64,000 nucleotides of DNA from positions 38,378,001 to 38,442,000 of the forward strand of contig NW_026262582.1 of NCBI RefSeq assembly GCF_021869535.1. The letters are read 5' to 3'. The notes below the pieces were generated by a model. That model did not search any database, was not told where the DNA came from, and was given only the letters and a program-made list of their open reading frames with translations. Made by a program: the position numbers and the translations under genes. Within the stretch, counting starts at the first letter, position 1; the number at the start of each line of letters is the position of its first letter. Source of the stretch: Mytilus californianus. Its lineage: Eukaryota. Below are positions 1,706 to 35,402 of the stretch, one piece after another.

Positions 1706-2051
1706 ACACACACCCGATGTATTTTTCCTGTATAGTTTTTTTTCAATTTCTTTATCTTGTAAAATATATTTTTTATGACACAAACTTTTATCCGTCTTCA
1801 TTAATGGATATTACGTTGGTACTCTTAGTGTGTTATATTTAGTTTTGACATCATCATCAATGCAATATATTTTTTTCTTGAAGACAACACTTTTAGATAT
1901 TACAACTATTTACTGCAGATATTCAGTCATTATCGGGTAAGGAATTTGGACAGTTCAGAGTGCTTTAAAAGAATGAAAATGTTTTGATATAATTTCTTTG
2001 GAACGATTGCGATAAAATAATAATGCATACGCTATGTATTTAAATTACAGA

Positions 2052-3550: not shown

Positions 3551-5194
3551 ACACCGGTTTAGGAACACTGACTCGTAGCATCGATAATAAGCCCAAAAGA
3601 TAAAACAAAAGTTTATATCTTAGTGAAAAATAAATTAATAACCGGGTTTTCAAATATTGCTTTAAACTTTTTATCAGATTTACCTTTTACTGACAAACTG
3701 AACCATACGGAAAGTAATCCAATAACTATTCAAATCTGAAGTGTAATGAATGTGACAACGTTTTTTCTTAAATACGAAGAATTAAAAAATCTAGAAAAAA
3801 TTTATTGATGGACTAGTTGTAAGTAATTTTCAAACTTGCACACTGAGCAAAAGAAGAGCATGAGGATGGGTTTGCATATTTCGGTCACACATTCTATATC
3901 AGTTCATGACAGATCAAAATTGTGTGTCAGTAAGTTTATTACAAAACCAATTATTAAAGAAAAACTTTATCTGAATGTTCCTTAGGGAATCTAGTTAAAA
4001 ACTACATCCGGGGAAATGATACATCAGTGAACATGGCACCAGTTGTTAATACTGATTTTTCTTTCAATTATTTTTATTATTTCAAACTGCGAAATAAACA
4101 TAGGGTATAAGGCTAGGATGAAACTTCGATGGTTTTATCCCTATGAGAATTGGTCAGACATCGTTACTTTTTTGGGAGAAGTACATTCCTAACGGACAAG
4201 AATGCTTCGAGAGAGGTATGAGGAAGAACGACTGAAATCGACACCACATCGTCACACTCACGAATCGTTTGCTCGTACCTACATGTCTGTGTCGCATCTT
4301 ACCAGCGACATGTTTCCGGAGTCTTACATCTTTAGATACAAAACAGATGTTAATAATGTCATTTTAGTAACTTTGTTATTCTTCAATGGAGTTTGTTCTT
4401 GATTTTGCACAAAAATCTTTCTGTATTGTTTATGACGTTGCTGAAAAATAATTACAGGACGAATTGAAAACAACAAACATATTCCTAACATTGTTCAAAA
4501 ATTCTGTGAAGAAAATGGTTGGTTAAATCTCATTTTATGCTTGCTAAATCTCCCATGGGTATTTAATTTGTTAATTAATAGTTCCGCTGCATTGATTAAA
4601 TTTGATGAACAACCCAGAGAAACACTATTGTTATAGTTCACTTATTGAACACCAAAGGAAAAGAGATGAGACTTTAACAATTTAGTTCAACCCGGATACC
4701 TTTTATGTTTATGTACCGATCCGAAGTCAAGAACCTCGTTGTTCGTCAAGTATCAAATCTTTATATGTTCGTTATTTTGAGGATCATATCTAATGGCAGA
4801 TATGTGATTATTTCTGTTTAATCGTTTGATCCTGCTAGATTTTAACCTTAAGATTGTATCGGTATAATGTCTACTGTGGATTCATTATGATTCGTTGGAT
4901 ACCAATTTTTGTGATTTTCGTGGGAACAGATCAACCACGAATTCAAATGTTCAATGAATTACACATTTTCTAAAGGCTTGGTATATAGAGATCGTAAAAC
5001 CACAAAATCAAATACCCAAGAAAATGAAAGTTCCCTCAATCCACGAAAATAAATGAATTTAGAGTACAATGTTGAGGATTAATTCATTCACTCTAACGGA
5101 GTTTAGTTTTTTTGTATTTAATACCAGTCTCGTGACCAAATATTATACATTTACACCACCTTTTATGAAACGCAGCAAGTACCGTATGTGTTAC

Positions 5195-14416: not shown

Positions 14417-16042
14417 TCCGAGAAAGCCTGTATTTTTGAGTATCCCGATATTATGTGCTGGTTGTCAGCGCGGTGATGAATACATATCAGTTGTATCTTG
14501 GTGCAGTGACTGCATTGAGCTTGTATGTAAGACGTGTTCCAGAGTTCACGAAAGGATGTCCCCACCTCACAACTCAGTTCTTCACTTCTCAAATTGTCCA
14601 AGAACTGCAAGAATCATCCAGATCACAAGATAGTACTGTACTGCTGTCAACATCACAAAGTAATCTGCGATTCATGTGTTCCGGTATCACACAAGAATTG
14701 CAAGTCTATCATTTCAATTGAAAAAACCGCAAGAGGCGTGAAAGATGGCACCGCTATTTCTGATCTAGAGAGAAGGATTATCAACCTATGTCAAGTTACA
14801 GAGAACATACTGAGTGAAGGGGGGACAACACTTGTAGATTTAGAAAAAAAATCGAAACAAAATCAAGAAAAGGGTTTCGTAAATCAAGCATAACATTATT
14901 GCTCATTTAAATAGGTTAGAAGCAGATATTCATAAGGACATGGATTCTAAGTATAAAACATGTACTGAGATGTTGTTCCGAAACAGTAACAGCATCCAAT
15001 CCAGCTTTGACTCGCTGTCTACATGGAAAAGTGATCTAAAATCACTGAAGCAACACACATCAGAAATCCGTTTATTCCAGGTGGTAAAATTTGTAGATGC
15101 AAAAACTTACAAGAAAGAATTGGAAATCAGAGAAATCCAAACAGCTACTGTTCCGATACTAAAATATCATCCGTCAGAATTTGAGTCGAACATTAAGAAA
15201 CTAGTCCCAGACTTAGGTAAAATAACGGTAGAAAATGTTCAAGTACCAATGCCTGTACTAGATATCGATCAACAAGGTCAATATAGAAGTTATCACAAGC
15301 ATATTCATTCCAGACCACGAAATTAGGTACTGGAGTAAGTATCTATAGAGGTTGCTTTATATCTGATGATAGGTTACTCCTCTGTCACAGCATGGACACA
15401 AAACTTTCTGTTTGTACACTTGATGGATCGAACTCCAACGTGATTGACTTGGATTATTCACCGTTAAAGATAAGCTTATATGACAAAACCCATGCTATAG
15501 TATCTGTTGGTGGTGAAGGTATCTAAATCATCGACCTGACAGCATTGACGCCTGGAAGGATAATTCAAGTTGATGAAATATGTTTTGGAATCACAAGTGT
15601 TAAGGATAAGATCTGGGTAAAAAATAAATCTTACATTCTCACAATTATAGATATCAATGGAAAAGTTCTAAAAGTAATTAAAACAACATTTGATCCTAAG
15701 GATATCTGTGCCAATCAAGACGGAGATGTGTATTGTACTGACTTAGATAGTAATAAAGTATATTTTGTTACAGTGAGCGGAAAAGAACGTGAGATATTCA
15801 ACAGTCCTGACCTTAAACATGCTACTGGTGTAACTGTAGATGACCGTGGTGATGTGTACGTAGCAGGATATAGATCTAACAACATACATAGAATATCAAA
15901 TGCTGGACAGAAACATGACATTGTCTTGATAGCAGACGACGGCTTCTATCAGCCGAGTGCTTTATCTTACAATAATGAAACAAAAGAACTGTTAGTCGTA
16001 AACGACGATTATAAATCTATCAAAATTTATAAAACCCAATGA
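14417..16042 (+). pseudogene. TRIM-like gene copy 2, pseudogene with a divergent 5' end
   Basis: Same B-box, coiled-coil and propeller content. 28-bp microhomology (acaa) deletion near 14572, +1 in the A-run near 14844, deletion near 15280, TAA 15524-15526. No ATG at the paralogous position; a tttcag acceptor ends at 14416. Confidence 0.85.
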
Positions 16043-16844
16043 ACACTGACTTAGGAACACTTCACATTTTAATGAAAAATTGATATATATATATAACCGG
16101 GTTATCAAATATTGCTTGAAACATTTTCAGATGTCGCTTCATACTTTTAAGTTGAACATTTCTGAAAATAATCTAATAATATTTTTATGAAAGTATCTAT
16201 TTTAAATCTGAATTCTAATGAATATGAGACCTTTTTACTGAAATATAACGAATTGCAAAATCTAGAAAAATAAAATGGTAGGCTTAATGTACTATATTAA
16301 GTAATGGTTCAAACTTGCACTGAGCAAGAGAAGGGCACTAAAGCGGATGGGTATGCATATTTTGGTCACAAGTTCTATTACAGTTCATGAAAGATCAACA
16401 TTGTGAGTCAGTTATAGAAAAAAATACCTGAATGTTTCCTTATGAATCTAGTTTAAAAATGATATCCCGAGAATTGATTTACCTGTAAAATGGCACCAGT
16501 TGTTAGAAATAGGGATAAAATGCTGACTTTTAAGAAAAATATATTTTAATTATTTCAAACTGCGGTTTGAACATAGGGTAAACGTTGGTGGTATTAACCC
16601 TATAACATGTATATTAATTGGTCAGACATTGTTACTTTATTATCGGAAGTATATTCCTAACATAAAAAAATACTTCAAAAGTGTTATAAGGAAGATCGAT
16701 TAAAATCGACACCACATCGTCACCATCACGAATCGTTTGCTTGATTCGATGCCTGTGTCTCAACTTACTAGCGACCGGAATCTTAGATCTTAGAACATTT
16801 TAGCAACAGTGTTTTCCTACAATGGGTACAGGGAAACAAAAATG

Positions 16845-17168: not shown

Positions 17169-17936
17169 ACAATGCTAAATCAACCATTTGTATACAACTT
17201 GTTTCAAGTTCCGTTACATTGATTTAATTCAATATAATTAAATCAATTTAACGGAACTTGAAACAGCTTTTATTTGAATCAATTGGGTGAACAATTCAAA
17301 GAGACACAATTGGTAGAGAATTATTATTGCGAACACAATGAGAAGATTTGAAACTTTAACAATTTAGTTCAACCGACCACCTTTTTATGTACCTGTCCTA
17401 AGTCAAGAACCTCGCTGTAAGTCATATATCATCTTAATGTTTTTAGTTATTTTGAGAATAATGTTTTAACGACAGATGTGTGATTATTTGTATTTAATCG
17501 TTTGATCCTGTTATATTTAAAGCTTGGTATTGTAAAGGCATTTGCATAATGTTGAAGGTTGACTTACGCCCCTTCTTAATGTCCCCTTTTGTTTATGTTT
17601 TTTGGGTAGTTTGTTTGTTTTTTTTCGTTTTGTGTGTTAATGGACCATCTCGTGAACAAATACCCTGCAAGTACGTCTCCTTTTAGTAATCGCAGCAAGT
17701 ATCATATGTGTTACTTTGTTTATGTCATAAATATTGCTCAAACATATGCAGTAATAGACTATTAGGTCGTCCTACTATGATGGTCACTCTTGATAAAATG
17801 ATTATAAAACTATAACTTCATTTCAAACGAGATAAAGGAATTAAAATACTAAAAAAATTAAGACATGAACGAATAGTTTATCAAACAAAAATATATTTTT
17901 CGTTATGTATATTTTGCATTAAGACGTTTAAACAGT

Positions 17937-18100
17937 TTTACACTAGTAATTTTTGGGGCCCCATATAGCTTGCTCTTCGGTGTAAGCCAAGGCTCCGTGT
18001 TGAATACCGTACTTTGACCTATAATGGTTTACTTTTATAAATTGTGACTTGGATGGAGAGTTGTCTCGCTAGCACTCATACTACATCTTCTTATATCTAT
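17937..18100 (+). mobile_element. SINE-like / retroelement 3' tail fragment
   Basis: Reverse complement of 41515-41680. Ends ggagagttgtctc...acatcttcttatatct. Confidence 0.7.
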
Positions 18101-18375
18101 TTGAACGTAAATATAATTAAAAAAAACCCAGATTAATGCGATCTGTTAATTCATCGATATCATTAAGATTACTACATAGCATATCGCATATACAATATAT
18201 TGCAGGCACTTCCGTGCTTTTGTTTTTATGTTGGGTATGTTTTTTTTAGTTTTGAAACCAACAAATCGGAGTTTACCATGATACACAAAATGCAGGGAAA
18301 AGTATTACACATATGAGAGCAAAACATTGCCATGTGATGTATACACTGTATTCATGTATTTAGATAAGCAGTTAG

Positions 18376-18969
18376 AGATGATTTCAGCTGCCCCATTTGT
18401 GCACTTTCCATTTCTATGTAGCAAAATTCCAGCAGCGCCTGCATACGAAGTACATATCTCCCGAAGGATCCGATATTCCCGGGTTTGTATTAAATATCAT
18501 GATTTCCTTGATAGAGGGCTGCTGCTCACAAGGAATTAAAAAAAAAAAACAGCTCTAAATGGTGAAGTTGAAATCATCCCTTCGTAAATTTTACGGACGC
18601 CATCACGAGTTGGCCATGGTTGACCGTTATCGAATAACCGTTTCACAGATGATATTGGATATGTTCTTTCTGTCGCTACTGCAATCCTCTTTCATTTTCA
18701 CGAATGTGAACTACCGAATTTACCGGGTTTGTAATAACATTATTAACACGACGGGTGCCAAATGTGCAGCAGGATCTGCGTACCCTTCCGGAGCACCTGA
18801 GATCACCCCCGGTTTTTGGTGTGGTTCGTGTTGCTTAGTCTTTAGTTTTCAATGTTGTGTCTCTTGTACTATTATTTGTTTGTTTGTCTTTTTCTTTATT
18901 AGCCATGGCGTTGTCAGTTTATTTTCGATCTATGAGTTGACTGTCCCTCTGGTATCTTTCGCCCCTCTT
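18376..18969 (+). mobile_element. 5'-truncated Penelope-like RT fragment with TTAG target duplication
   Basis: FPFLCSKIPAAPAYEVHISRRIRYSR...VKLKSSLRKFYGRHHEL. TTAG at 18372-18375 and 18970-18973. The empty paralogous site gcagttag|tctgaagctgg is at 27623-27626. Confidence 0.85.
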
Positions 18970-20084
18970 TTAGTCTTGAGCTGGCATGTCAGTAACTGTT
19001 AGTAGTTCTTTGTTAATGTAATGATATGTGTGCCGCTTTCTCTAAAATGATCATCGTTGGTAATTTGTTTGACCATATGGTATATTTCTCATGACGGATG
19101 CATCAGAATCTCGTAAATTTTCTATTCCAATCAATTTTGATAATTCAATTAGGGAATTACGTTTTGTAATGTTTAACATGATTTAGTACTGCGGAGCAGG
19201 AAAACCGAAATTTGTAAAATGTATTATATATGTTATATGTACAGAGAAATATTTATTTATATTCGAATCCAACTGCTTACATAAGTAAACGAATTGGGAT
19301 CTAAAACGATAATTTTTGTGTGCACAACTAGATTTTAAAAGACTACTTAAGTATGTTCTACTCTTTCAATCTATTGGTAAATTCAGTACTGTTCAGACCA
19401 TCTGATTGCTGTCAATTAAGATCTGTTCAGTCTATGCCCATAAATTTTTTTAGTATCACACTGTTTTTAGTTGTAGACAACAACATTATTCTTAATTGCC
19501 TGAAAAGCATCTTATAAATACTGGATTGATTTCAAGCGAAGTGAACAAGACTGAACGAATTTATTGTTCGGACCTTTACATTATATCAGATAAAACTTGG
19601 TTCCCTGGCACAGAGGAACATGCACAGTAATCCAGGAATTTAATGTCCTTTTAATAAACTACTCATGGATTCGAAGATAAACGTAGATTGATTTGTTATT
19701 TACTTAGTTCTCTTTTCTTTTCACATGTTTTGGGTAGATGTGCATTGTACGCCCTCAACGCCGCTCTGAACACGCCTTGTCCGTGGGATCCTTGTGTATT
19801 AAGGATTTGTATAGTAATATGTACATCATTATACAAAGCCTTGGGTCACTTCAATTGTATCACAAGATATGTTGTGTCACCGGAAAAGCAAACATAACTA
19901 TATAAGCGACAATACATGTGTAGTTACCCACCTACTTGATCTACAATTTGGTTACCTACAGGGTCTAAAAATATCTTTAATTTCTTTATTTATCAACATA
20001 AACACGATAAATGTGATTTAAATTTTAGTGCCGATTCAGTCAAATCACCTTTGGAACATTTAGGCAGTTTTCCTTTAATCAAAT

Positions 20085-20181
20085 GAGAATTCCCACTAAA
20101 AACGGAAGTAATTTTAATGTGTCTAGGTTCATAACAAACAAAAGACACAGCTTTGTTTTAAAACAAACTGGATAGGTAAGT
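20085..20181 (+). promoter_or_regulatory. Candidate promoter and non-coding first exon of copy 3 (variant kB and ISRE sites, strong donor)
   Basis: GAGAATTCCC 20085-20094; AAAAACGGAAGT 20098-20109; TAG|GTAAGT donor at 20176, about 1 kb before the acceptor at 21171-21172. Confidence 0.45.
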
Positions 20182-21173
20182 TAATTCTAAAAATCATATT
20201 CAAAATAGAAAAGTAAAACTTCTAATGACAAGGATGACAATACAAAGTGTTTGTTTACGTCGGTAACCAAGATTATTTAAAATAATTACAAATCACAATT
20301 TCAAAAATAGAATCCGTTAAAGTATAATATGTGTTATGATTATTTGAAAATTACATTCTCAGGCATGTTGAGGTGTTTTTATATTTAATCAAGATACTTG
20401 TAGTATACGGACATTTTCAAGAAAGACGTTATTCGTTGCTGCATTATGATGATAAGAAATGAAGAAAAATAATGAACACGCTAACACTAAAGCTGTGTTC
20501 ATATACCAATTTTCCCTTTGAATTTGTTTATTTACTTAACTTCAAACGTGCCAGTGTTAATATCGGATAAATACGAATCGATGTTTTTAATAATTTTCTT
20601 GATATTTCTATGGACCAAAGGCGCTTGATGCATGGAACCCCCTTCTTTTTTTTATTCATATCCACGTTAATTATTTTCACTATTTGATGTTTTCTAACGA
20701 TATTAAAATGACAGTAGTTTGCACTTTTTTGTACTTTATCGTTCTCATTTCTATTTTCCAAAAGTTTTAAATACATTCTTATTCATTTTTTTATTCCGAC
20801 TGTTATATAGGATGTTTTATTTTCCCCTAAGATGTATTTTTCCTGTATCTTTTTTTTAAATTTCTTTATCTTGTGAAATATGTTTAGTTATCAGACATAC
20901 TATTATCTGTCGTAAGTAATGGTTAAGACTTTGATACTCTCTTGTTACATTTAGTTTTGACATAGTTATCAATGCACTTTTTTTTTTGAAGACAAAACTT
21001 TTAGATTACATTTCTGTTTTTTCTGGGGCTTTTCAGTCATTGTCGGATAAGGAGTTGAGACAGTACAGAGTGAACGCAATTGCTTTAAAAGAATGAAAAT
21101 GTTTTGATATAATTTCTTAGGAAAATATGCCATTTGATGAAATAAGGCATACGCTATGTATCTCTATTACAGA

Positions 21174-22827
21174 ATGGCAGACAGTAAATTCTGTGCTGGA
21201 TGTCAGCGTGGTGACGAAGACATAAAAGCCGTATCATGGTGCAGTGATTGCATTGAATATGTATGTAAGGCGTGTTCCAGAGTTCACACAAGGATGTCTC
21301 CGCCTCACAAGGTAGTACCAATGCAAGAGATGCAACAACTTAATTCTTCACTTCTTAAATTGTCCAAGAACTGTGACAATCATCCAGATCAAAATATTGT
21401 ACTGTACTGCTGTCAACATGACAAGCTAATCTGCGATTCATGTGTTCCGGTATCACATCAGAATTGCAAGTCTATCATTTCAATTGAAAAAGCTGCTAAA
21501 GGCGTGAAAGATGGCGCCGCTATTTCTGATCTAGAGAGGAGGATTTCCAACCTATGTCAAGTTACAGAGAACGTACGGAGTCAAAGGGAGACAACACTTG
21601 TAGATTTAGAAACAAATCGAAACAAAATCAAGAAAATGGTTTCGGAAATCAAGCATAACATTATTGCTCATTTAGATAGATTAGAAGCAGAGATAAATAA
21701 TGACATTGATTCTAAGTATAAAACCTGTTCTGCGGTGGTGTCCCAAAACAAAAAAAAGCATCCAATCCAGCTCAGACGCCCTGTCTACATGGAAAAGTGA
21801 TCTAAAATCACTGAAGCAACACACATCAGAAATTCATTTTTTTCAGGTGATGACATTTCTAGATGCAAAAACTTGCCTTAAAGAATTGGAAATCAGAGAA
21901 ATCCAAACAGCTACTGTTCCGATACTTAAATACTATCCGTCAGAATCTGCGCCAAACATTGAGAAACTAGTCCATGACTTAGGTACAATAACGGTAGAAA
22001 ATGTTCAAGTTCAAATGCCTGTACTAGCTATCGATCAACAAGGTCAATTTCTCGTTAGGGACGAAAGAAAGTTATCACTAGCACATTCATTCAGGACCAC
22101 GAAATTAGGTAATGGAGTCAGTATCTATAGAGGTTGCTTTATTTCTGGTGAAAGGTTACTCCTCGGTCACATCATGAAGAAACAACTTTTTGTTTGCGCG
22201 CTTGATGGATCGAACTCCAACGTGATTGATTTGGATTATAAACCACTTAATATAAGCTTATATGACAAAAACCATGCTGTAGTATCTGTTGGTGATGCTG
22301 GTATCCAGATCATCGACCTGACATCATTAAAGCTTGGTAGGAGAATTAAGGTTGAAGGATTCTGTGGAGGAATCACCAGTGTAAAGGATAAGATCTGGGT
22401 CAAAAATAAACCTGACACTCTCACCATTGTGGATGTTGACGGTAACGTTCTTAAAGTAATACAAACAACATTCGATCCTAGTGAAATCTGTTCCAATCAA
22501 GATGGTGATGTATATTGTACTGATAACAAAAATAGAAATAAAGTATACGCTGTTACATTTGACGGAAAAGAACGTGAAATATACAACAGTCCTGACCTGA
22601 AAAGTACTGCTGGTGTTGCTGTGGATGACCGTGGGGATGTGTATGTAGCAGGATTGTTATCAAACAACATACATAGAATATCTAATGATGGACAGAAACA
22701 TGGCATTGTCTTGACAGCAGACAATGGCATCAATGAACCGACCGGTATATCTATCAACAATGAAACAAAAAAACTGTCAGTCTTAAAAGACCTTTATAAA
22801 TCTATCAATATTTATAAAACTCAATGA
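21174..22827 (+). CDS. TRIM-like gene copy 3: 550 aa if one extra A at 21750-21757 is bypassed, otherwise a 208-aa B-box/coiled-coil protein
   Basis: ORFs 21156-21800 and 21700-22827 overlap at an A8 run. No other stops or frameshifts. Acceptor tattacag lies immediately before ATG 21174. All B-box Cys/His residues are present. Confidence 0.8.
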
Positions 22828-23759
22828 ACATTGGTTTAGGAACACTGTTGATTAGCGTATAAGTTTAAATATGACGAATAAAAAAATGTAGAAAAATATA
22901 TTGATATGCTAAATGTGCTAGTTGTAAGTAATTTTTCAAACTTGCACACAGAGCAAGAGAAGAGCCCTATAGCGCATGGGTTAACATATTTCGGTAACGC
23001 ATTCTATATCAGTTCATGAAAGATCGAAATTGTGAGTTAGTAATTTGGGACTTTATAATAAGACCAACATTTAAGAAAATATCTGAATGTTCCTTAGGGA
23101 ATCTAGTAGTTGCTTGATTCGATATGCCTGTGTCGGATCTTACTAGCGAAATGTTTCTGGAGTCTCAGATCTTAGAAAATTTTAGTAACTGTGTTTTTCT
23201 GCATTGGAATTATGTATTGTTTGTTCATGATTTTGCACAAGATTTTTACTTTATTTATTGTTTATGAAGTTGCTTAAAAAAATTACAGAAGAAATGCAAA
23301 ACAAAAAATAAATTTGTGATTTCTTACAGACATTTTTAAGAAAATGGTGGTTTAAACCTGGTTTTATGATTGCTAAATCTCTCATTTGTAAAAAAATAAG
23401 TTGTTTATAGTTCCGTTACATTGATTCAATTGGGTGAATATTTCAAAGAGACATAATTGGTTGAGTTCACTTCTTGTGCATAAACGGATAAGGGTTGTAA
23501 CTTAATCAATTTAGTTAAACCCGGCCACCTTTTAATGTACCTGTCCAAAGTCAAGAACCTCATTGTTCGTCAAGCATGCATAACTACATTAATCACAACA
23601 CATTTGTAACGACCCATCTACTATGGTACAAACATATTGGTTAGCTACAGGGTCTAAAAATATCTTTTTATCAACATCAACACTAATGCAATTTAAATTT
23701 TAGCGCTGATTCAGTCGAATCACTTTTGAAATATTTAGATAGTTTCCCTTTATTCAAAT

Positions 23760-23784
23760 GGGAATTCCCACTGAAAATGAAACT
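23760..23784 (+). promoter_or_regulatory. NF-kB site plus ISRE-like site in a gene-less remnant unit
   Basis: GGGAATTCCC 23760-23769 followed after 3 bp by GAAAATGAAACT 23773-23784. Confidence 0.5.
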
Positions 23785-24729
23785 AATTTAATTTACCTCG
23801 GTTGATAAAAAAAAAATGTCAGAATAGGCGAAAAAAGAAACTAAACAAATGACAATGATACGTAAATTAACAAAGGACTACTAGCAGGTACTGACATACA
23901 ATGCTAAATCTATCATTTGTATACATTTATTCAATTCAATATAATTGAATCAATGTAACGAAACTATAAACAACTTTTATTTAAATCAACATGATCAATT
24001 GGGTGAACAATTCAAAGTGACACAATTGGTAGAGTTCACTGATTGCGTACACAATGAGATAGGTTGAGACTTTGAAAATTTAGTTCAACCCTTCCACCTT
24101 TTTATGTACCTGTCCTAATTCAAGAACCTCGTTGTTAATCGTATATAACATCTTTAGGTTAATGTTTTTCGTTATTTTGAGAATCATGTTTTAATGGCAG
24201 ATGCGTGAGTTTTTCTGTTAAATCTTTTGATCTTGTTAGATTTAAAGCTTGACATTATATAGGCATTTGTATAATGTTGAAGGTTGAATTTGTTTTGAAT
24301 GTCTTCTTTTGGTTTTTGTTTTGTGTTAAAGACCAGTCTCGCAAAAAACATATCCTACCTGTACATCTCCTTTTAGTAATCGCAGAAAATATCATATGTG
24401 TTACTATGTTTATGTAATAAAAATTGCTCAAACAAATACAGTTATAAACTATTGGGTCTTCCTACTTTGATGGTGACTCTTGATAAAATGATAATAAATA
24501 TATACCTTCATTTCAATAAAGATAAAGGCACTAAAATATCAAAAAAAAATAATATCATAATCAAATCTTCACACGAACGAAGACATGCGAAGAGTTCATC
24601 AAACAAAACAATATTGTTCGTTATGTATGTGTTGCATTTTGAACGTACAAATAAAAAAAAAACAGATTAATTTCATCGGTTAATTTATCGATATCATCAA
24701 GATTACTACATTTCATATCGCATATACAT

Positions 24730-24876
24730 ATAGAATAATACATGTCAAAATCCGTATCGCATGCTGTATCACCATGGAAAACCAATATTAGTCCAGAGGG
24801 CCGAAGGTCCCGAGGGCTGATATTGGTCGAGTGGTGATACAGCATGCGATACGGATTTTGTCATGTATTGTTCTGT
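24730..24876. mobile_element. Small foldback (fully palindromic) MITE-like element
   Basis: 24737-24774 versus 24832-24869 match at 37/38 as inverted arms. Inner arms accaatattagtcc / gggctgatattggt; central gggcc-gaa-ggtccc hairpin. Confidence 0.8.
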
Positions 24877-25012
24877 TTATCATATGTTTTAATAATTAAA
24901 ATCAGATTCATGATATGTAAGCGGACAATCATTCGATGCTTACATGTCTTAGGCAGGGGCATGACAAATTTTAGAAATAAACATGATAAATATCCTTGCG
25001 TCCATTTTGTTG

Positions 25013-26400
25013 AAATAAAATTGAGAATGGAAATGGGGAATGTGTCAAAGAGACAACAACCCGACCATAGAACAGACAACAGCAGAAGGTCACCAACAGG
25101 TCTTCAATGCAGCGAGAAATTCCCGCACCCGGAGGCGTCCTTCAGCTGGCTCCTAAACAAATATATATACTAGTTCAGTGATAATGAACGCCATACTAAA
25201 CTCCAAATTGTACACAAGAAACTAAAATTAAAAATAGTACAAGACTAACAAAGGCTAGAGGCTCCTGACTTGGGACAGACGCAAAAATGCGGCGGGGTTA
25301 AACATGTTTATGAGATCTCACCCCTCCCCCTATACCTCTAGCCAATGTAGAAAAGTAAACGCATAACAATAAGCACATTAAAATTCAGTTCAAGAGAAGT
25401 CCGAGTCTGATGTCAGAAGATGTAACCAAAGAAAATAAACAAAATGACAATAATACATAAATAACAACAGACTACTAGCAGTTAACTGACATGCCAGCTC
25501 CAGACTTCAATTAAACTGATTGAAAGATGATGTCTTCATCATATGAATATCAGGCACAATCCTCCCCGTTAGGGGTTTAGTATCATACCATCATAACATA
25601 TATGAGAAGAACATAACCCGTGTCATGCCAACAACTGGTTTTTAAATAATTGTGTTGAGTGCCGATGCAAAGACCCTATAAGTGAATCAATATAAACGCC
25701 AAAATATGCAATCTTTAATGACCTGACAACAGTATCGTAACTATATCCCTTCTTAATAAGTCTATTTAAAGGTTTTGTTAGCTTCAGAGGTGAAAACTGA
25801 CATTTTTGTGCTTTATAAAGAATATTTCCATAAAAAATTGGATGTGAAATACCTGAACGTATAAGAAGTCTGCATGTTGAGCTATATTTACGAATGATGT
25901 CCTTATACCGATGATAAAATTTAGTAAATGTTTTGACTAGTTTGTGATATCGAAAACCCTGGTGTAATAATTTTTCAGTAATACATAAATTTCTCTCGTT
26001 AAAATCTAAAACATTGTTACATACACGAGCGAATCGTACAAGTTGAGATATATAAACACCGTAAGATGGTGACAAGGGAACGTCACCATCTAAAAATGGA
26101 TAATTAACGATAGGAAATGAAAAATCATCTCTTTTATCATATATTTTAGTATTAAGCTTTCCATTAATGATATAGATATCAAGATCGAGGAAAGGGCAGT
26201 GGTCATTGTTAGTATTAGCTTTATTTAAAGTAAGTTCAACAGGATAAATTTCTTTAGTATACATACTGAAGTCGTCATTATTGAGAGCCAAAATATCATC
26301 CAAATATCTAAAAGTATTATTAAATTTGTGTATCAGATGTTGTTTCGATGGGTCTTTGCTGATTTTTGTCATAAATTGTAACACATAGCAATACAAAAAA
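25013..26400 (-). mobile_element. 5'-truncated Penelope-like retroelement (RT C-terminal half plus about 600-bp 3' UTR)
   Basis: Contains the RT ORF below. The UTR ends ccccatttccattctcaattttattt on minus. Truncated UTR copies occur at 16845, 23810, 54368 and 63243. Confidence 0.85.
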
Positions 26401-26408
26401 AAATACAT
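25623..26408 (-). CDS. Penelope-like reverse transcriptase, C-terminal about 255 aa, uninterrupted
   Basis: FRYLDDIL (YLDD at 26295-26306), CPFLDL, TKIYDKRDDFSFPIVNYPFL, YGVYISQLVRFARVC. The ORF ends with no downstream GIY-YIG. Confidence 0.85.
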   Translation of the reverse strand: MYFFLYCYVLQFMTKISKDPSKQHLIHKFNNTFRYLDDILALNNDDFSMYTKEIYPVELTLNKANTNNDHCPFLDLDIYIINGKLNTKIYDKRDDFSFPIVNYPFLDGDVPLSPSYGVYISQLVRFARVCNNVLDFNERNLCITEKLLHQGFRYHKLVKTFTKFYHRYKDIIRKYSSTCRLLIRSGISHPIFYGNILYKAQKCQFSPLKLTKPLNRLIKKGYSYDTVVRSLKIAYFGVYIDSLIGSLHRHSTQLFKNQLLA

Positions 26409-26788
26409 ATATATTCTGGCCCAAATACATTTTTGTAATCATTTACAATGGTATCAACAATAAACAAAAAATCCGGAAAGAAGTATTATCAGTTTTTGTT
26501 TTGATGGATATACATGAACGTTCCCCTTACTTTTCGCCTAATAAAAATATAATTTCGTTCATGAAATCTTAAATAGTAAAAAAAAGAAAAGAAATTCTCG
26601 CTAATTTTACAATTTTGGATAATGATAGGCCTACTCCTCTTGTCGTGGACCCACCCTCGATTGTAATGGTATTTTATTGTATGTGTATCTTATAAAAAGC
26701 TGATCTGTATCCCAACAGATAAATTAATTTACGGTGTGAAAAGTTGATGCTGACGGATGGCGAAAAGGGGCATATTTGGAGTCAATTG

Positions 26789-26914
26789 CAGGGACGGATC
26801 CAGCCATTTTAAAAAAGGGGAGCGGGGCTCCAACTATATATATCCCCATTTAAATGCATTGTTCGTCAAAAAGGGAAGGTCCAACCCCCAGACCCCCTCC
26901 CGGATCCACCCCTG
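26789..26914. mobile_element. Short TIR MITE
   Basis: cagggacggatcc (26789-26801) / ggatccacccctg (26902-26914), 11/13 inverted match. No TSD is visible. Confidence 0.6.
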
Positions 26915-28523
26915 ATTTTGGGGATGGTCAGAAAATATATTCTTGCCCAGGCGGAGTGAACATAATAATAGGCCGTCTTCATGTTGGAAATAGATATGGA
27001 AATAAAGATATTGACCTCATCAAATTTGCTAGCTAGCCCAACCCCACCCAGCCCCTTCCAACTACATGGTCGTCCGCCAACAAATTGCTGCTAAGCCCTC
27101 TTGCTGATGGTTAAATTTCGTATCATGTAAGGAAATACGGCAACTGGACGTCAAATGTCGATATATGGCATCACATCTTGATGATCATGAGGTAACATTG
27201 GAGAGCTTGCAAAAATTAAAATATATAATATTTGGTCTTTTATTTGAAAGAAATGCTGTAATGAATAAGTACTTGCATATATAGATCAATAGTATAACAA
27301 CTGAGGAGTCCCGGAAACAATCTCGATATGTTCCAAAAGGGGTGCGATACGGGGTATGCGATACAGGGTAGATGATTTCAGACTGGAGTAAAGAACCTTT
27401 ATCAGATATACAAAATTTCTGTAATCAGTACTAAATATATGATAAAATCGTATATTGCAGGCACTTCCGTGTTTTATTTTTTGGGTACGTTTTTTTTCAG
27501 TTTTGAAACCAATAAATCGGAGTTTACCTATATACAAAAAATGCAGGGAAAAGTATTACACATATGAGAGCAAAACATTGCTGTGTGATATATACACTGC
27601 ATACATGTATTCAGATAAGCAGTTAGTCTGAAGCTGGCATGTTAGCAACTACTAGTAATTCTTGCTAATGTAATGTAATGTGTGCTGCTTTCTCTAAAAT
27701 CATCATCGTTGGTTAATTGTATAACTAGATGGTATACATGTATTTCTCAGGACGAATGCACAAACTTCTCGTAAATTTTCTATTACAATCAATTTTGATA
27801 ATTCAATTAAGTTTTGATAATTCAAATAAGGAATAACTTTTTGTAAATTTTAGCTTGATTCAGAATTGCGGAGCTGGAAAACTGAAACTTGTAAAAAATA
27901 TATTATATGTACAGAGAAATATTTTATTATATTTGAATCTAATTGCTACCATAAGTAAACGAATTTGGATCTGTAACGATAATTTTGGTCTAAACAACTG
28001 GATTGTTAAAGACTACTTAAAGTGATTTTTAGTCTTTCAATCTAGTGCCTCATCATTTGTTTTAGTTGTAGACAATTACACCATACTTAATTGTGTGAAA
28101 TGTATCTTATAAGTACTGGGTTGATTTCAAGCAAAGTGAACACGACTGAACAACTTTATTTTTCAAACTTTCACATGATTTTCAGATAACTTGGTTTCAT
28201 GGCACATATCCAAGCATTGAACGTCCTTATTATAAGCTACTATTTTTTTCAAAGAAAAACGAAATTGATTTGTTGACTTGGTTTCATTTTCTTTTCATAT
28301 GTTTTGGGTAGATGAACGCCCTATACGCCTTTCTTAACCCGCCGCTGATTTATCCCCGCCCCTTTCTCATGGGTTCCTTGTTTATTAAGGATTTGTATAG
28401 CAATATATACCTCACTATACAAAGCCTTGGTTCAATTTAATTGTATCTCAAGATATTTTGTGTATTAAAAACAAATATTTTCGTATTAAAAACAAATATT
28501 TTGGTACGAAAGACCATACAAAC

Positions 28524-29416
28524 CACAGGCACACGTCTCAGAAAAAAAAATTCCTATATATATACCTTAATATAACACAAGGTACTTAACTCGCATTTTT
28601 GAAAAATGTCAGCCGGTCGCAAAATTCCGTTATATGCCGATTTCTCGGTTGTCAACCCCACTTTAACTTGTTATGTCGTAAATTTAAATTGATTTATCTT
28701 CACAATTGTGTATAACAAGCCTACTTTTGTTGTTGGAATCATCCGTAGCAATCCTACCCAAGTATGTCAATCGTAATTATTTCGTCTACCGACGCCAAAT
28801 TGGAAACAAACGTCTCGCAGTAAAAGGTATCTTCCCACTTTCTTTATATATCTCGGTTTTCGATTGGTCAATTTTTATGGGAAAGTCTAAATGATTCTCG
28901 GAGTTATTTGATCTTATTTCATTTCATACATAAAGTCAAGTGAGAGTCTGAATGACATTAACGTAATGGGAAAATTTGTGTCTAAAAAAGGAAACTCGTA
29001 ACTTATTAGACATTTTTTTTTTACGGTATCTTATACAATTTTGCTAACTGGGTGATAAGTTCTTTTTCAGACAAAAACTAACAGTTTTTTCTGAAACAAT
29101 TTTTATAATTAATCAATTACTGCGAGATTTGTGTTTCCAATCTGACGTCGGTAGACGAAATAATTACGATTGACATACTTCGGTAGACCTGATACAGATT
29201 ATTCTGACAACAAAAGTAGGCTTGTTATACACCATTGTGTAGAAAAATCAATGTAGAATTACGGCATAACAAGTTTTAGATAGGTTGACAACTGAGAAAT
29301 AGACATACAACGGAATTTCGCAACCGGCTGACATTTTTCAAAAATGCGAGTTAAGTACCTTGTGTTATACATGTATTAAGGTATATGGGATTTTTTTTCT
29401 GAGACAAGTGCCTGTG
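28524..29416. mobile_element. 893-bp non-autonomous DNA transposon with about 300-bp TIRs and perfect 8-bp TSD
   Basis: 28524-28822 is inverted at 29117-29416. Ends CACAGGCAC / GTGCCTGTG. TSD atacaaac at 28516-28523 and 29417-29424. Confidence 0.9.
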
Positions 29417-29618
29417 ATACAAACATACATAACTCGTTATTGACAATATATTTGTAATGATGCACCTACTATGGTACACGCAAATTGGTTAGCTACATTG
29501 TCTAAAAGTATCTTTGATTTCTTTATTTATCAGCACAAACACACAAGCAATTTAAATATTAGCGTCGATTCAGTCAAATCACCTTTGGAAGATTTAGATA
29601 GTTTCCCATTAATCAAAA

Positions 29619-29713
29619 GGGAATTCCCACTGAAAACGAAAGTAATTCGAATGTGCCTGTGCTGATACAAAACAAAGACACAGTTCTGTTCAAAACAAAA
29701 AGGATACGTAAGT
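29619..29713 (+). promoter_or_regulatory. Candidate immune promoter of copy 4: NF-kB + ISRE, then first-exon donor
   Basis: GGGAATTCCC 29619-29628; GAAAACGAAAGT 29632-29643; GTAAGT 29708-29713, at the position paralogous to the donor at 20176. Confidence 0.55.
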
Positions 29714-30620
29714 TAAATCAAACAATCATATTTATAATAGAAAAGTACAACTTCTAATGATAAAGATGGCAATACAACTCGTTTGTTTACATTGGTAACC
29801 AAGTTCATTTAAAGAAGCTTACAAACCACAATTCCAAAAAAAGTATCCTTTAAAGAATGTATGTTATGATTAATTGAAAACTACATGAAATGGAATATTG
29901 AGGTGTTTTAATATTGACATTTTCAAGAAAGACGTTATTCGTTGCTGCATTATGATGAAAAGAAACGAAAAAAAAAAAACCACACAAAAACTAAAGCTGT
30001 GGTCATATACCAATTTTCCTTTGAATTTGCTTAGTTACCTAACTTCAAAAGTGACAGTGTTAATCTCTGATCAATACGAATCGATGTTTTTGATAATTTT
30101 TTTGATATTTCTCTGACTTAAGGCACGTATTTTTTATTCTTAATAATGTCCATTATTTTTACTATTGGATTTTTTTATTTCGATATTAAGATAACAGTAG
30201 TTTGCGTATATCATTGTACCATTTTTATTTTCTTTTTCCCAAATTTTTAGACATTCTTACTCATCTTTTTATTCCAACTGTAGTATGTAATGGTTTATTT
30301 TTTACACAAAATATTTATTCCTGGAAATTTTTAACACTTTTTATCTTGAGATATATTTTGTTGGTAACACAAACTATCAACCAGTTGTCGTATTTAATGT
30401 GGAGAACTTGGGGTACTGTAATTGTGTTACATTTAGTTTTTGAAACCATTCACGATTTCTTCTTTTTTTCTTGACGAAAAAGCTTATAGATACTACTTTT
30501 TTTTCTGCAGCTATTAGTTATCTGATAAGAAGTTGAGGCATTTCAGAGTGAATGATCCGGCTTTAAAAGACTAAAAATGTTTTGAAATGATTTTTTTTGA
30601 AAAATGTCATTAGTTAAAAT

Positions 30621-31489: not shown

Positions 31490-31624
31490 GTTAGAATACT
31501 ATTTATGTTTACATTTAACCGAAAATTATTTACAGACCATTTCAGGCCAAAGAAGTCCGCCACTGTTCATACTTTAAGTGAATGACTTTACTGCAGACGC
31601 CATTCTTTTTTTTATTCTTACAGA

Positions 31625-33282
31625 ATGACGGACAGTAAATTCTGTGCTAATTGTCAGTGTTTTGATAAAGACACAAAAGCCGTATCATGGTGCAGTAATT
31701 GCATTGAATTTGTATGAAAGGTGTGTTCCAGTGCTCACGAAATAATGTTCCCGCCTCACAAGGTAGTACCATTGCAACAGATGCAACAACTCAGTTCTTC
31801 ACTTCTTATATTGTCAAAGAACTGCGACAATCATTCAGATCAAAAGATTGTGCTGTACTGCTGTCAACATGACAAGGTAATCTGCGTTTCATGTGTACCG
31901 GTATCACATCGTAATTGTACGACCGTGTCCATTGAAAAAGCTGCTAGAGGCGTAAAAGATAGCACCGCTATTTTTTATCTAGAGAGAAGGATTTCTAACC
32001 TCTGTCAGGTTACAGAGAACATACGGAGTCAAAATGAGACAACACCTGTAGATTTAGAAAAAAATCGAAAAACAATCAAGTTAAAGGGTGTCGGAATTAA
32101 AGCAGACCATTATTGCTTATTTAAATACGTTAGAAGCAGCGATACATAAAGACATTGATTGCCATTATAAAAACTGTACTGAGAGTGTGGCCCGAAAGAA
32201 AAAATAGTATCCAATCCAGCTTAGACTCGCTGTCTACATGGAAAAGTGATATAACATCACTGAAGGAACACACATCTGAAATCCATTTATTCCAGTTCTT
32301 AAAATTTCTAGATGCAAATACATACCAGAAAGAATTGGAAATCAGAGAAATCCAAACAGCAGCTGTTCCGATACTCCGATATCATCCATCAGAATAAGAG
32401 TCGAACATTAAGAAACTATTCCTAGACTTGGGTACAATAACGGTAGAAAATGTTCAAGTACCAAAGCCTTTACTAGATATCGATCAACAAGGTCAATTTC
32501 TCGTTAGAAACGACAGAAAGTTATCACTAGCACATTCATTCAAAATCACGAAATTAAGTAAAAGAGTAAGTATTCCCAGAGGATGCTTTATTTCTGAGGA
32601 TAAGTTACTCATGTTACTCCTCGGTCACAACAATGACGAACAACGTTTTGTTTGTACACGTGATGGATCGAACTCCAACGTGATTGATTTAGATTATTCA
32701 TCACGAGATATAAGCTTATATGACAAAAACCATGCTTTAGTATCTGTTGGTGATTCAGGTATCCAGATTATCGACCTGACAGCATTGAAGCCTGGTAGGA
32801 TAATCAGAGTTGAAGGAAACTGTAGAGGAATCACCAGTGTAAAGGACAAGATCTGGGTAAAAAATCAATCTTAAGTTCTAACCATTATGAATATCAATAG
32901 TAAAGTTCTAAATACAATACAAACAACATTTAATCCTTATGAAATCTGGGCCAATCAAGATGGTGATGTCTATTGTACTGACAACAATAGTGTTAAAGTA
33001 TACGTTGTTACATCGGATGGAAAAGAACGTGAGAAATACAACCGTCCTGACCTGAAAAGTGCTAATGGTGTAGCTATAGATGACCAAGGTGATGTGTATG
33101 TAGCAGGATATATATCAAACAAAATACATAGAATATCTTACAATGGAAAGAAACATGGCATTGTCCTGACAGCAGACGATGGTATCAATGGACCGAGCGC
33201 TATATCTTACAACAATGAAACAAGAGAACTGTTAGTTTTTAACGACGGTTCGCAATGTTTCAACATCTATAAAACACAATGA
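31625..33282 (+). pseudogene. TRIM-like gene copy 4, pseudogene
   Basis: Acceptor ttcttacag before ATG 31625. TGA at a Cys codon 31715-31717, +1 near 32085, +1/TAG at 32205-32207, TAA 32395-32397, TAA 32872-32874. Confidence 0.85.
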
Positions 33283-35402
33283 ATACTAGCTAAGAGGCAC
33301 TTACTTAGTTAGTATGGATGGTTACCCTAAAGATAAACAAAAAAGTTTTTATATCTTAATGAAAAAATTGATATAAATATAACCGGGTTTTCAAATATTT
33401 ATTGAAACTTTTTCAGATTTACCTTTATACTGACAAATTGAACCATACCGAAATGATTAAATAATATTTGATGGAAGTATCTAACTAAATCTGAAGTCTT
33501 ATCAATATGAGACCTTTTTTCTTAAATACTACGAATTAGAAAATCTAGAAAAATATTTTGATTTGGACTACATTTTTGTATTTATACATTGCAAGTAATT
33601 TTTCAAACTTGCACACAATGCAAAACTAGAGCACTGTAGCGGATGGGTTTAAATATATATTGATAGGCTTTTTGTACTAGTTGTAAGTAATTTTTCAAAT
33701 TTGCACACTGAGCAAGAGAAGGACACTATAGCGGATGGGTTTGCATATTTCATTCCATTCTATTTCAGTTCAGGAAAGACCAAAATTGTGAGTCAGTGAT
33801 TTGGAACTTTATAATAAGACCAAATATTAAAAAAAAACTTTATCTACATGTTCCTTAGGGAATCAAGTTCAAAATGATATTCGGTGATTTGATACATCAG
33901 TAAACATGGCACCAGTTGTTAAAAATAGAAATAAAATGCTGATTTGTTTTTAATTAGTTTTATTATTTTAAATTTTGAAAAAAAAACATAGAGAAATATG
34001 TTAAGGGGGAAATTCAGTAGTATTACCCTTATGGTAATTGGTCAGACTTCGTTACTTTATTATCAAAAGTACATCACCATCATAAAAAAAATGCTTGAGA
34101 AGAGCTCTGAGGAAGAACGACTAAAATCGAAATCACATTGTCTCCATCACAAATTATTTGCTCGATTCCATAAGACTGTATCGCAATATACTATCGACAT
34201 GTTTCCGGAGTCTTAGATCTTAGAACATTTTAGCAACAGTGTTTTCCTGCAATGGGATTATGTACAGTTTGTTCCTGATTTTTATCAACATTTATCTTTC
34301 TGTAATGTGATGACTTTGCTGACAAAAAATATTACGGAACGATAGGAAAACAACAACAAAAAATCGTGATTTAGCACAGAAATTTTGTGAAGACAATGGT
34401 GGGTTTAACCTGGTTTTATACCTGCTATATCTCCCATATGTATTAAAATTGTTTATAGTTCCGTTACATCGATTCAATTCAATTCAATTGAATTAGCGTA
34501 ACGGAACTATAAACAACTTTTATTTGAATCAATTGTGTGAACAATTCAAAGAGACATAATTTGTACAGTTCACTTATTGCGTACAAAAGCCGAAGGGTTG
34601 AGACTTTAACAATTTAGTTCAACCCGGCCGCCTTTTTATGTACCTGTCCTAAGTCAAGAACCTCGTTGTGAATCGTATATCACATCTTAATGTTTTTCGT
34701 TATTTTGATAATCATGTTTTAACGGCAATGTGTGATTATTTCTGTTTAATCTTTTGAGCCTGCTAGATTTAAGTTGGCATTGCATTGAATTTGTATAATG
34801 TTGAAGGTTGACTTATGCCGCCTTTTGAATGTTTCTTTTGTTTGTTGTTTTTCTTAGGGGGTGACATATTGTTATTCTACGTTTCTTTTTTTTCTTTTTC
34901 TTATTTTTCTTTTTCATTGATTTGATTTAATTCAATGGCCATTGGATTGATATTATTTATCTCTTTTATTGGCGTTACTTTTTTTTTCTACAGAAAATAA
35001 TGCCCATTAATCTATTGAAGAGAGGACTATTTCAGTCAAATTAATCTTTGTTTTAATTGCATATTTTACAAAACTATCATTTTTTTTCTGACAAAAAGTA
35101 ATGAGTGATTTTAATGGATTCATGAGATTTAATGGTTTGTTAAGGTGAGAGGTACGTAAATGAACGCCTCTAGCGGAAAACGGGAAAATTTACGTTTGTT
35201 GTTATGAGAGTTATCTCCCGTACTCCAGAAAAATATTTTCAAGATGTCGGAAGATATTCCGCTTCTTCGGAATAATGGTCAATTCGGTGGAATGCACCTC
35301 ATCAAATAATAACAAAAATGGAAGTATGTAAATGAAATTTCTTTTCCGGGTTAAACATTGCTTTCCTCGAGCGCCAGCAATGAAAATGAAAGTAAATTGG
35401 CA

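What the first reader, a model, noticed from the sequence alone, without database searches (positions are those of the whole stretch)
20085..29713. Composite NF-kB + ISRE module in each array unit, eroded in front of the best-preserved gene
A perfect palindromic kB site (GGGAATTCCC) is followed 3 bp later by GAAANNGAAA(C/G)T, at 23760-23784 and 29619-29643. About 65 bp downstream is a conserved GTAAGT donor, roughly 1 kb of unit sequence upstream of the acceptor abutting the ATG. This resembles vertebrate antiviral Rel/IRF enhancers and suggests an infection-inducible TRIM family. The version before copy 3 is mutated (GAGAATTCCC; AAAAACGGAAGT, now with an ETS-like GGAAGT), hinting at regulatory divergence. 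The copies are duplicates, so this counts as one observation, not three.
Basis: partly seen in the sequence, partly recalled or inferred. Interest (0 to 1): 0.7.

Follow-up and report, generated by a model that had tools for sequence, protein, structure and literature searches.

The report
Conserved kB/ISRE-like mussel promoter block
A short DNA block carrying textbook-looking NF-kB and interferon-factor sites is kept upstream of a family of TRIM-like genes in several mussel species, but the one working gene copy here has a mutated block and is transcribed from a different, further-upstream exon, and no infection response has been shown.

Summary
GGGAATTCCC, then 3 nt, then GAAANNGAAA(C/G)T stands at 23760-23784 and 29619-29643. 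A mutated version stands at 20085-20109. All three lie in one ~250-300-bp block of a four-copy array of RING-less B-box/NHL genes in a mussel.

New here:
- A profile search finds the block upstream of homologous genes in M. edulis, M. trossulus, M. galloprovincialis and M. californianus, including a 62%-identical paralog on another chromosome.
- The ISRE-like 12-mer is among the slowest-evolving parts of the block. The kB-like 10-mer evolves at the block's ordinary rate, is broken in M. californianus, and is otherwise always 3 nt from the ISRE.
- GTAAG follows in 17 of 18 copies.

RNA-like contigs from two runs join window 17353-17416 (donor GTAAGT) to the acceptor at 21173, so the mutated block lies inside a 3.76-kb intron.

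Those contigs also lack one A at 21752, which gives an intact 550-aa reading frame. The two intact motif pairs precede nothing (23760) or a pseudogene (29619).

The "erosion" in front of copy 3 is no more than ordinary drift. Binding and inducibility are untested.

Unchecked notes of this scan record similar ISRE/kB modules on other DNA of this genome.

The parts
19886..20175 (+). Block copy before gene copy 3. It holds TTTAAAT 20017-20023, mutated kB-like GAGAATTCCC 20085-20094, mutated ISRE-like AAAAACGGAAGT 20098-20109, and the putative exon end at 20175 with GTAAGT at 20176-20181.
   Evidence: No RNA-contig depth lies over it and it sits inside the observed intron.
23571..23816 (+). Orphan, 3'-truncated block copy with kB 23760-23769 and ISRE-like 23773-23784. 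It has no donor. It is flanked by a duplicated 'X' piece (23418-23567) and a high-copy repeat (23816-23925).
   Evidence: Low-depth contigs run straight through it.
29420..29707 (+). Block copy before pseudogene copy 4. It holds TTTAAAT 29551-29557, ATTCAGTC 29568-29575, kB 29619-29628, ISRE-like 29632-29643, and GTAAGT at 29708-29713.
17350..17416 (+). The non-coding 5' exon actually joined to copy 3 in RNA contigs (at least 67 nt). GTAAGT follows at 17417-17422.
   Evidence: the contig's 5' piece plus 'CT' is joined to 21173. Its 5 mismatches and 1 gap against 24069-24131 are exactly the differences between that stretch and 17353-17414. Only this copy reads ...CCTCGCT|GTAAGT.
17417..21172 (+). 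Observed 3756-nt intron of copy 3. It contains the mutated block.
21173..22827 (+). Coding exon of gene copy 3 (B-box, NHL). ATG is at 21174 and the stop ends at 22827. The assembly carries one extra A in the run ending at 21752.
   Evidence: RNA contigs run from 21173 to about 23240 and lack one nt at 21752. Leaving it out gives 550 aa with no stop.
31618..33283 (+). Gene copy 4, broken into ORFs of 142, 148 and 131 aa (pseudogene). It lies 1.9 kb after the intact block at 29619.
14450..16061 (+). Gene copy 2, 5'-truncated and broken. No block lies upstream.
2034..3570 (+). Gene copy 1, broken into short ORFs. Upstream homology to the unit starts only at 1322, and no block is present.

Best explanation
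The ~250-300-bp block is the ancestral proximal promoter plus non-coding first exon of a Mytilus family of single-coding-exon, RING-less B-box/coiled-coil/NHL genes. It carries, in fixed order, a TATA-like TTTAAAT, a block TTTCCCTTTAATCAAA, a kB-like decamer, exactly 3 nt, an IRF-type element GAAAACGAAAGT, and 20-75 nt later a GTAAG donor. That donor pairs with the acceptor one base before the ATG.

Shown here: the block is kept in 18 copies from five genomes, the IRF-type element is among its slowest-evolving parts, the donor is kept, and the acceptor is used.

Inferred: IRF-family (and perhaps Rel) proteins bind it and make the family inducible. It is not known whether transcription starts before or after the two sites.

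In this window the system is mostly dead. Copies 1, 2 and 4 are pseudogenes and the middle block is an orphan fragment. The only working gene, copy 3, has a block that lost the IRF core. In the RNA available, copy 3 is transcribed from a lineage-specific exon at 17350-17416, 3.76 kb upstream, bypassing the block.
For: - Motifs are present as described.
- Block plus about 1 kb of intron lies directly upstream of homologous genes in M. edulis and M. trossulus (L001, L002, L007, L010); in M. galloprovincialis (L008) the block lies about 4.1 kb upstream of the coding exon.
- In the more distant M. californianus (L003) and in the paralogs L009 and L012, only the block and about 100 bp before the ATG remain alignable, while the intron is not.
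- L012 is a 62%-identical paralog on another chromosome. It reads GGAAAATCCC-ACT-GAAAACGAAAGT with a donor 21 nt later.
- Parsimony counts on 18 copies: the ISRE 12-mer has 0.58 changes per column against a mean of 1.98, and only 8 of 190 windows are as low. The 25-mer composite ranks within the lowest 5 of 177 windows.
- The IRF core AANNGAAA is kept in 17 of 18 copies. kB-like sites with at most 1 mismatch occur in 13 of 14 non-californianus copies, in several sequence variants, always 3 nt from the ISRE.
- The acceptor at 21173 is used, and the junction 17416->21173 appears in contigs of two runs.
- Bivalve IRFs act on or bind vertebrate-type ISREs (PMC5557890; PMC13524488).
Against: - No transcript that starts in or splices from the block was seen in any species. 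RNA depth over 19992-20175 is zero.
- Between the window and M. edulis or M. trossulus, the intron is nearly as conserved (about 0.72) as the block (about 0.8). Much of the 'conservation' is therefore simply young age.
- The kB decamer evolves at an ordinary rate, with 69 of 192 windows as low, and is broken in all four M. californianus copies.
- ISRE-like 12-mers arise by chance three more times in this window.
- If TTTAAAT is a true TATA box, both sites would lie about +36 to +60 inside the transcript, which is unusual for an enhancer.
- A 59%-identical paralog (L011) has no block.
- The copies are related by duplication, so the counts are not independent.
Confidence: 0.55

Rival explanations
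1. The block is a real promoter and first exon, but the two motifs are chance look-alikes. The constraint on GAAAACGAAAGT would then serve another factor (for example a PRDM1/Blimp-type or other GAAA-binding protein), or an RNA-level function in the 5' UTR. The genes would not be infection-inducible through Rel or IRF.
For: - The kB decamer shows no rate constraint and is lost in M. californianus.
- Neighbouring blocks without any immune-factor reading (TTTAAAT, TTTCCCTTTAATCAAA) are as conserved as the ISRE, at 0.7-0.8 changes per column.
- In L012 only 21 nt separate the ISRE from the donor, which favours a transcription start upstream of both sites, so they would be transcribed.
- No expression data link the family to infection.
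Against: - The 12-mer fits the ISRE/IRF-E consensus perfectly in 15 of 18 copies.
- A kB-compatible decamer recurs in several different spellings at a fixed 3-nt distance.
- Bivalves have IRFs that act on such elements.
Confidence: 0.25
2. There is no function at all. The block is neutral unit sequence carried along by recent tandem and segmental duplication, and the motif pair is a post-hoc pattern match.
For: - The three window copies are duplicates.
- The intron is about as conserved as the block among close species.
- The intact pairs stand before nothing or before a pseudogene.
- The working gene does not use the block.
Against: - The block survives where the intron has become unalignable or has grown up to ten-fold: M. 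californianus (block 4-13 kb from the coding exon), L009 and L012.
- The donor is kept in 17 of 18 copies.
- The ISRE is in the lowest ~4% of windows for change.
Confidence: 0.12
3. The block is part of a mobile element, such as an LTR-like or MITE-like promoter, that spread among the genes.
For: - The homology has a sharp 5' edge near 19886-19900.
- The orphan fragment at 23571-23816 sits between a split palindrome (23391-23431 and 23943-23982) and beside a high-copy repeat.
Against: - The profile finds it only next to family genes: three copies in 64 kb, about one per gene unit in the loci, always on the gene's strand and upstream.
- No contig depth excess lies over it, whereas the true repeats at 23272-23435 and 23764-23927 reach depths of 200-600.
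- No Rfam family matches it.
Confidence: 0.05

Closest known systems
Vertebrate MHC class I promoter: Enhancer A (kB sites) directly followed by an ISRE (my own knowledge, not tested here)
   Same: A kB-type decamer and a GAAANNGAAA-type element sit a few bases apart, close to the start of the gene.
   Different: This is a mollusc with an unrelated gene family. No binding or induction is shown. The kB half is not under measurable constraint. The sites may lie downstream of the transcription start.
IFN-beta enhanceosome (PRDII kB site next to PRDI/III IRF sites) and virus-inducible ISG promoters such as CXCL10 (my own knowledge)
   Same: Rel and IRF sites are juxtaposed as a composite.
   Different: There is no ATF/Jun part, no evidence of cooperative binding, and the order and spacing differ.
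Interferon-inducible vertebrate TRIM genes (TRIM5/21/22/25 and others; my own knowledge)
   Same: An expanded, tandemly duplicated B-box gene family with ISRE-like promoter elements.
   Different: The mussel proteins lack a scoring RING and end in an NHL propeller, not SPRY. Inducibility is untested. In M. galloprovincialis hemocytes only TRIM56- and TRIM33-annotated contigs are reported as responsive (TRIM56 after poly I:C) (PMC7773633), and these are not shown to be this family.
Bivalve IRF/ISRE axis (oyster CgIRF2/8 activate human ISRE and IFN-beta reporters, PMC5557890; CgIRF1 and scallop IRFs bind ISRE, PMC13524488)
   Same: It supplies trans-factors in bivalves with vertebrate-like specificity that could read GAAAACGAAAGT.
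   Different: Those studies used mammalian reporters or the CgIFNLP promoter. No native Mytilus target element of this kind appears in the papers I could search.
Other ISRE/kB promoter modules noted by this scan on other pieces of the same genome (s1-302532, s1-302602, s1-288026)
   Same: Short ISRE-like plus kB-like modules upstream of RING or TRIM-like propeller genes, said to be kept in several mussel species.
   Different: They concern other genes on other DNA. I could not read their sequences, and a search by sequence gave nothing. They are unchecked AI notes.

Membership tests
NF-kB/Rel binding site | 10-mer fits GGGRNWYYCC | tested here: met
   It fits at 23760 and 29619. 20085 has 1 mismatch. 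8 of 14 non-californianus copies are perfect and 5 more have 1 mismatch.
NF-kB/Rel binding site | Evolves more slowly than neighbouring non-coding DNA | tested here: not met
   1.5 changes per column against a mean of 1.98. 69 of 192 windows are as low, and the site is broken in all four M. californianus copies.
NF-kB/Rel binding site | Bound by a Rel protein; mediates induction | not testable with these tools
   Needs EMSA, DAP-seq or reporter assays.
ISRE / IRF-E | Fits GAAANNGAAA(C/G)T, with minimal IRF core AANNGAAA | tested here: met
   It fits at 23773 and 29632. 20098 has 2 mismatches and has lost the core. 15 of 18 copies are perfect and 17 of 18 keep the core.
ISRE / IRF-E | Evolves more slowly than neighbouring non-coding DNA | tested here: met
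   0.58 changes per column against 1.98, with 8 of 190 windows as low. The copies are related, so this is a rank, not a probability.
ISRE / IRF-E | Bound by IRF; gene induced by virus, dsRNA or an interferon-like signal | not testable with these tools
   The sequencing runs are coded, with no challenge metadata. One true RNA run (X6) shows almost no reads on copy 3.
Core promoter plus non-coding first exon | Splice donor kept at the 3' end of the block | tested here: met
   GTAAG follows in 17 of 18 copies, including the deep paralogs L009 and L012. It is missing only in the truncated 23571-23816 copy.
Core promoter plus non-coding first exon | Junction from that donor to the acceptor seen in RNA | tested here: not met
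   For copy 3 the contigs join 17416, not 20175, to 21173. Contigs can miss rare forms.
Core promoter plus non-coding first exon | Transcription start mapped in the block | not testable with these tools
   No reads start there. The three Logan/ENA contigs fetched (L004-L006) are unspliced.
TRIM (RING/B-box/coiled-coil) proteins | RING finger | tested here: not met
   Only PF25080 zf_RING-like at 19 bits, below its cut-off of 27.
TRIM (RING/B-box/coiled-coil) proteins | B-box | tested here: met
   PF00643 at E 4.5e-10, 40 bits against a cut-off of 24.1.
TRIM (RING/B-box/coiled-coil) proteins | Coiled coil | not tested
   No coiled-coil prediction was run.
TRIM-NHL subgroup | C-terminal NHL propeller | tested here: met
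   PF01436 at 25 bits against a cut-off of 20, with related six-blade propeller families below their cut-offs.

The most novel reading that the evidence does not exclude
A compact Rel/IRF-responsive promoter (kB, 3 nt, ISRE, a few tens of bases from the first-exon donor) is the shared switch of a large, fast-duplicating family of TRIM-like genes in mussels. It would be old enough to be kept between paralogs that are only 62% identical. This would be a native cis-regulatory signature of an interferon-like, 'ISG-type' regulon in a mollusc. This window would then show a live case of promoter replacement: the only functional copy lost the IRF core and now starts from a lineage-specific upstream exon.
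Probability: 0.3. Interest if true: 0.65.

Novelty: new member of a known kind. Interest (0 to 1): 0.4.

Why it matters
Whether molluscs run an interferon-like, IRF-driven gene programme is argued mostly from trans-factors tested on mammalian reporters. A native element kept across a whole expanded gene family would give a concrete sequence to mutate, to use as bait, and to search for genome-wide. It would also link the large bivalve TRIM-like expansions to a defined regulatory input. The window offers a natural contrast as well: intact element, mutated element and replaced first exon, all within one array. As it stands, the evidence is comparative only.

Tried and rejected
- Transcripts with a 5' UTR. 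The three Logan/ENA contigs that encode relatives (L004, L005, L006) are unspliced or unrelated upstream, so they say nothing about the first exon.
- A second protein search with the N-terminal piece gave only one Logan hit.
- A metagenome scan for a 21-nt core of the element found nothing.
- Other ISRE-like matches at 5020, 18403 and 35382 are not homologous to the block and are chance hits.
- Heat-shock element reading of GGGAATTCCC: rejected by eye, because GAA and TTC are not spaced as nGAAnnTTCn.
- Known RNA family or SINE reading: no Rfam match on the block. The only hits are sub-threshold ones on the 17199-17266 palindrome and at 25540.
- 'Erosion beyond drift' in the copy-3 block: rejected.
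- The 'X' exon as an ancestral first exon: rejected. It has five copies in the window but is absent from the M. edulis and M. trossulus loci.
- Literature on Mytilus TRIM-NHL promoters: none found.
Full report
**What is in the window.**
The region holds four tandem, same-strand copies of a single-coding-exon gene. Its product has a B-box (PF00643, E 4.5e-10) and an NHL-type propeller (PF01436, 25 bits), but no scoring RING. The copies lie at about 2034-3570, 14450-16061, 21173-22827 and 31618-33283. Relatives are numerous in M. edulis, M. trossulus, M. galloprovincialis, M. californianus and M. coruscus, at 50-77% identity, so the window is from a Mytilus-lineage mussel. Copies 1, 2 and 4 are broken into short ORFs. 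Copy 3 has two overlapping ORFs, 21156-21800 and 21700-22827.

**The observation.**
- GGGAATTCCC occurs exactly at 23760 and 29619, and as GAGAATTCCC at 20085.
- Three bases later stand GAAAATGAAACT (23773), GAAAACGAAAGT (29632) and AAAAACGGAAGT (20098).
- The composite pattern matches twice, against none in 100 shuffles. The copies are duplicates, so this is one event.
- The motifs lie in a block present three times: 19886-20187, 23571-23816 and 29420-29720.
- GTAAGT follows at 20176 and 29708.
- The middle copy is cut off at 23816 by a high-copy repeat and has no donor.
- The acceptor TTACAG|A-ATG is shared by copies 1, 3 and 4.

**Conservation elsewhere.**
I fetched the genomic loci of nine homologs.
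- In M. edulis (L001, L007) and M. trossulus (L002, L010), the block and the about 1-kb stretch down to the ATG lie directly upstream of the genes. In M. galloprovincialis (L008) the block is present about 4.1 kb upstream of the coding exon.
- L002 carries two tandem copies of block plus intron before one gene.
- In M. californianus (L003) there is about one block per gene unit, 4-13 kb from the coding exon. Only the block and about 100 bp before the ATG still align.
- A profile built from 17 copies also finds the block 1.6 kb upstream of a 62%-identical paralog on another M. trossulus chromosome (L012) and upstream of a paralog on another M. edulis chromosome (L009). It finds none near a 59% paralog, L011.
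- The L012 sequence reads GGAAAATCCC-ACT-GAAAACGAAAGT, with a donor 21 nt later.

**How constrained are the motifs?**
- Between the window and M. edulis or M. trossulus, the intron is almost as similar (about 0.72) as the block (about 0.8). Close-species identity therefore proves little.
- Parsimony counts on a tree of 18 copies give 1.98 changes per column on average.
- The ISRE 12-mer has 0.58 changes per column, and only 8 of 190 windows are as low.
- The 25-nt composite ranks within the lowest 5 of 177 windows.
- The TATA-like block and the TTTCCCTTTAATCAAA block have 0.7-0.8 changes per column.
- The kB decamer has 1.5 changes per column, which is ordinary: 69 of 192 windows are as low.
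- Even so, 13 of 14 non-californianus copies keep a decamer within one mismatch of GGGRNWYYCC, in several spellings, always exactly 3 nt from the ISRE.
- All four M. californianus copies have the kB broken by a deletion or a 4-nt insertion.
- The ISRE consensus is perfect in 15 of 18 copies, and the minimal IRF core AANNGAAA is present in 17 of 18. The exception is the copy at 20098.
- The copies are related by descent, so all these figures are ranks, not probabilities.

**RNA evidence.**
- One run search and one read-laying run were allowed.
- Three runs (X1-X3) are kept as contigs and labelled 'RNA?'. They behave as RNA. Depth is zero from 19500 to 21139 apart from a repeat, and contigs begin exactly at 21173 and run to about 23240.
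- In X2 and X3 a contig joins a 5' piece plus 'CT' to 21173. The tool laid that piece on 24069-24131 with 5 mismatches and 1 gap.
- Those are exactly the differences between 24069-24131 and window 17353-17414.
- Of the five copies of this 'X' sequence, only the one at 17386 reads ...CCTCGCT|GTAAGT.
- So the copy-3 mRNA seen here uses a non-coding exon of at least 67 nt ending at 17416 and an intron 17417-21172, which swallows the mutated block.
Contigs can drop rare forms, so this is not proof of absence.
- The X exon is absent from the M. edulis and M. trossulus loci, so it is a lineage-specific addition.
- A true RNA run of the same species label (X6, 6% of it read) has almost no reads on copy 3.

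**Side result on the frameshift.**
All three contig runs lack one base at 21752, in an A-run. Leaving it out gives one open frame of 550 aa. Copy 3 is therefore a working, expressed gene in other individuals. The frameshift is either an allele or a homopolymer error of the assembly.

**Is the copy-3 block 'eroded'?**
Descriptively yes: one change in the kB and two in the ISRE, creating CGGAAGT. But this copy departs from the family consensus at only 13 of 163 well-conserved columns, fewer than most copies. Three of those fall in the 22 motif positions, against 1.75 expected. That is compatible with drift. Its nearest relative in the tree, a M. edulis copy (L007b), keeps the ISRE, so the loss is specific to this lineage. 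The coincidence with the use of another first exon is suggestive only.

**Where does transcription start in the block?**
This is unknown. TTTAAAT lies 68 nt before the kB in most copies. If it is a TATA box, the start would fall near ...AATCACC, and both sites would sit at about +36 to +60 of a 90-125-nt first exon. The 21-nt gap between ISRE and donor in L012 favours that reading. Alternatively the start lies just after the ISRE. I could not settle this.

**Background.**
- Oyster IRF2 and IRF8 activate human ISRE and IFN-beta reporters, and oyster TRAF6 activates an NF-kB reporter (PMC5557890).
- Oyster and scallop IRF1-type proteins are reported to bind ISRE (PMC13524488).
- In M. galloprovincialis hemocytes, TRIM56- and TRIM33-annotated contigs are among the few ubiquitin ligases raised by the stimuli (TRIM56 listed among poly I:C DEGs) (PMC7773633). 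These are not shown to be this family.
- I found no paper on a native Mytilus ISRE.
- Unchecked notes of this scan record similar ISRE/kB modules upstream of other RING or TRIM-like genes on other DNA of this genome.

**Verdict.**
The block is best read as the family's ancestral promoter and first exon, with a constrained IRF-type element and an adjacent kB-like site that is less secure. Its function is plausible but untested. In this window the intact copies are relics, and the only live gene bypasses its own mutated block.

Noticed in passing
window 21744-21752: The single frameshift of gene copy 3 lies in an A-run. RNA-like contigs of three runs lack one base there (and read G at 21751), which gives an intact 550-aa frame. 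The frameshift is an allele or an assembly homopolymer error, not a fixed defect.
   Followed up: yes
window 17087-17562, 23816-24287, 34465-34851, 4599-4859: A composite 3'-flank element recurs after each gene copy: a high-copy repeat, an AT-rich palindrome and the 'X' piece. Only the 17386 copy of X has a GTAAGT donor, and it serves as the first exon of copy 3. The X' copy at 23965-24124 is also covered by exact low-depth contigs.
   Followed up: partly
window 23816-23897 (also 17087-17196, 25410-25492, 54773-54852) and 23272-23435: Two short repeats have very high depth in RNA contigs (200-600, against 12-40 for the gene). Many raw RNA reads of run X6 run on into unlike sequence there. They are probably abundant transcribed mobile-element pieces.
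   Followed up: no
window 23391-23431 and 23943-23982: A 41-nt inverted pair (92% identity) brackets the about 490-bp segment that holds the duplicated X piece, the orphan block fragment and the repeat. The flank of copy 4 has the undivided palindrome instead. This looks like a rearrangement at a palindrome.
   Followed up: partly
window 25623-26408 (-): A 261-aa ORF with an RYLDDIL motif (reverse-transcriptase-like) and no Pfam hit lies in the spacer between copy 3 and the 29619 block. It is probably a retroelement remnant.
   Followed up: no
L002 6547-7567 and 8783-9834: In M. trossulus one gene has two tandem copies of block plus intron upstream. These are possible alternative first exons.
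   Followed up: no
window 25540-25604 (-): A SECIS_1 match just under threshold (33.2 bits against 35). It is probably chance.
   Followed up: no
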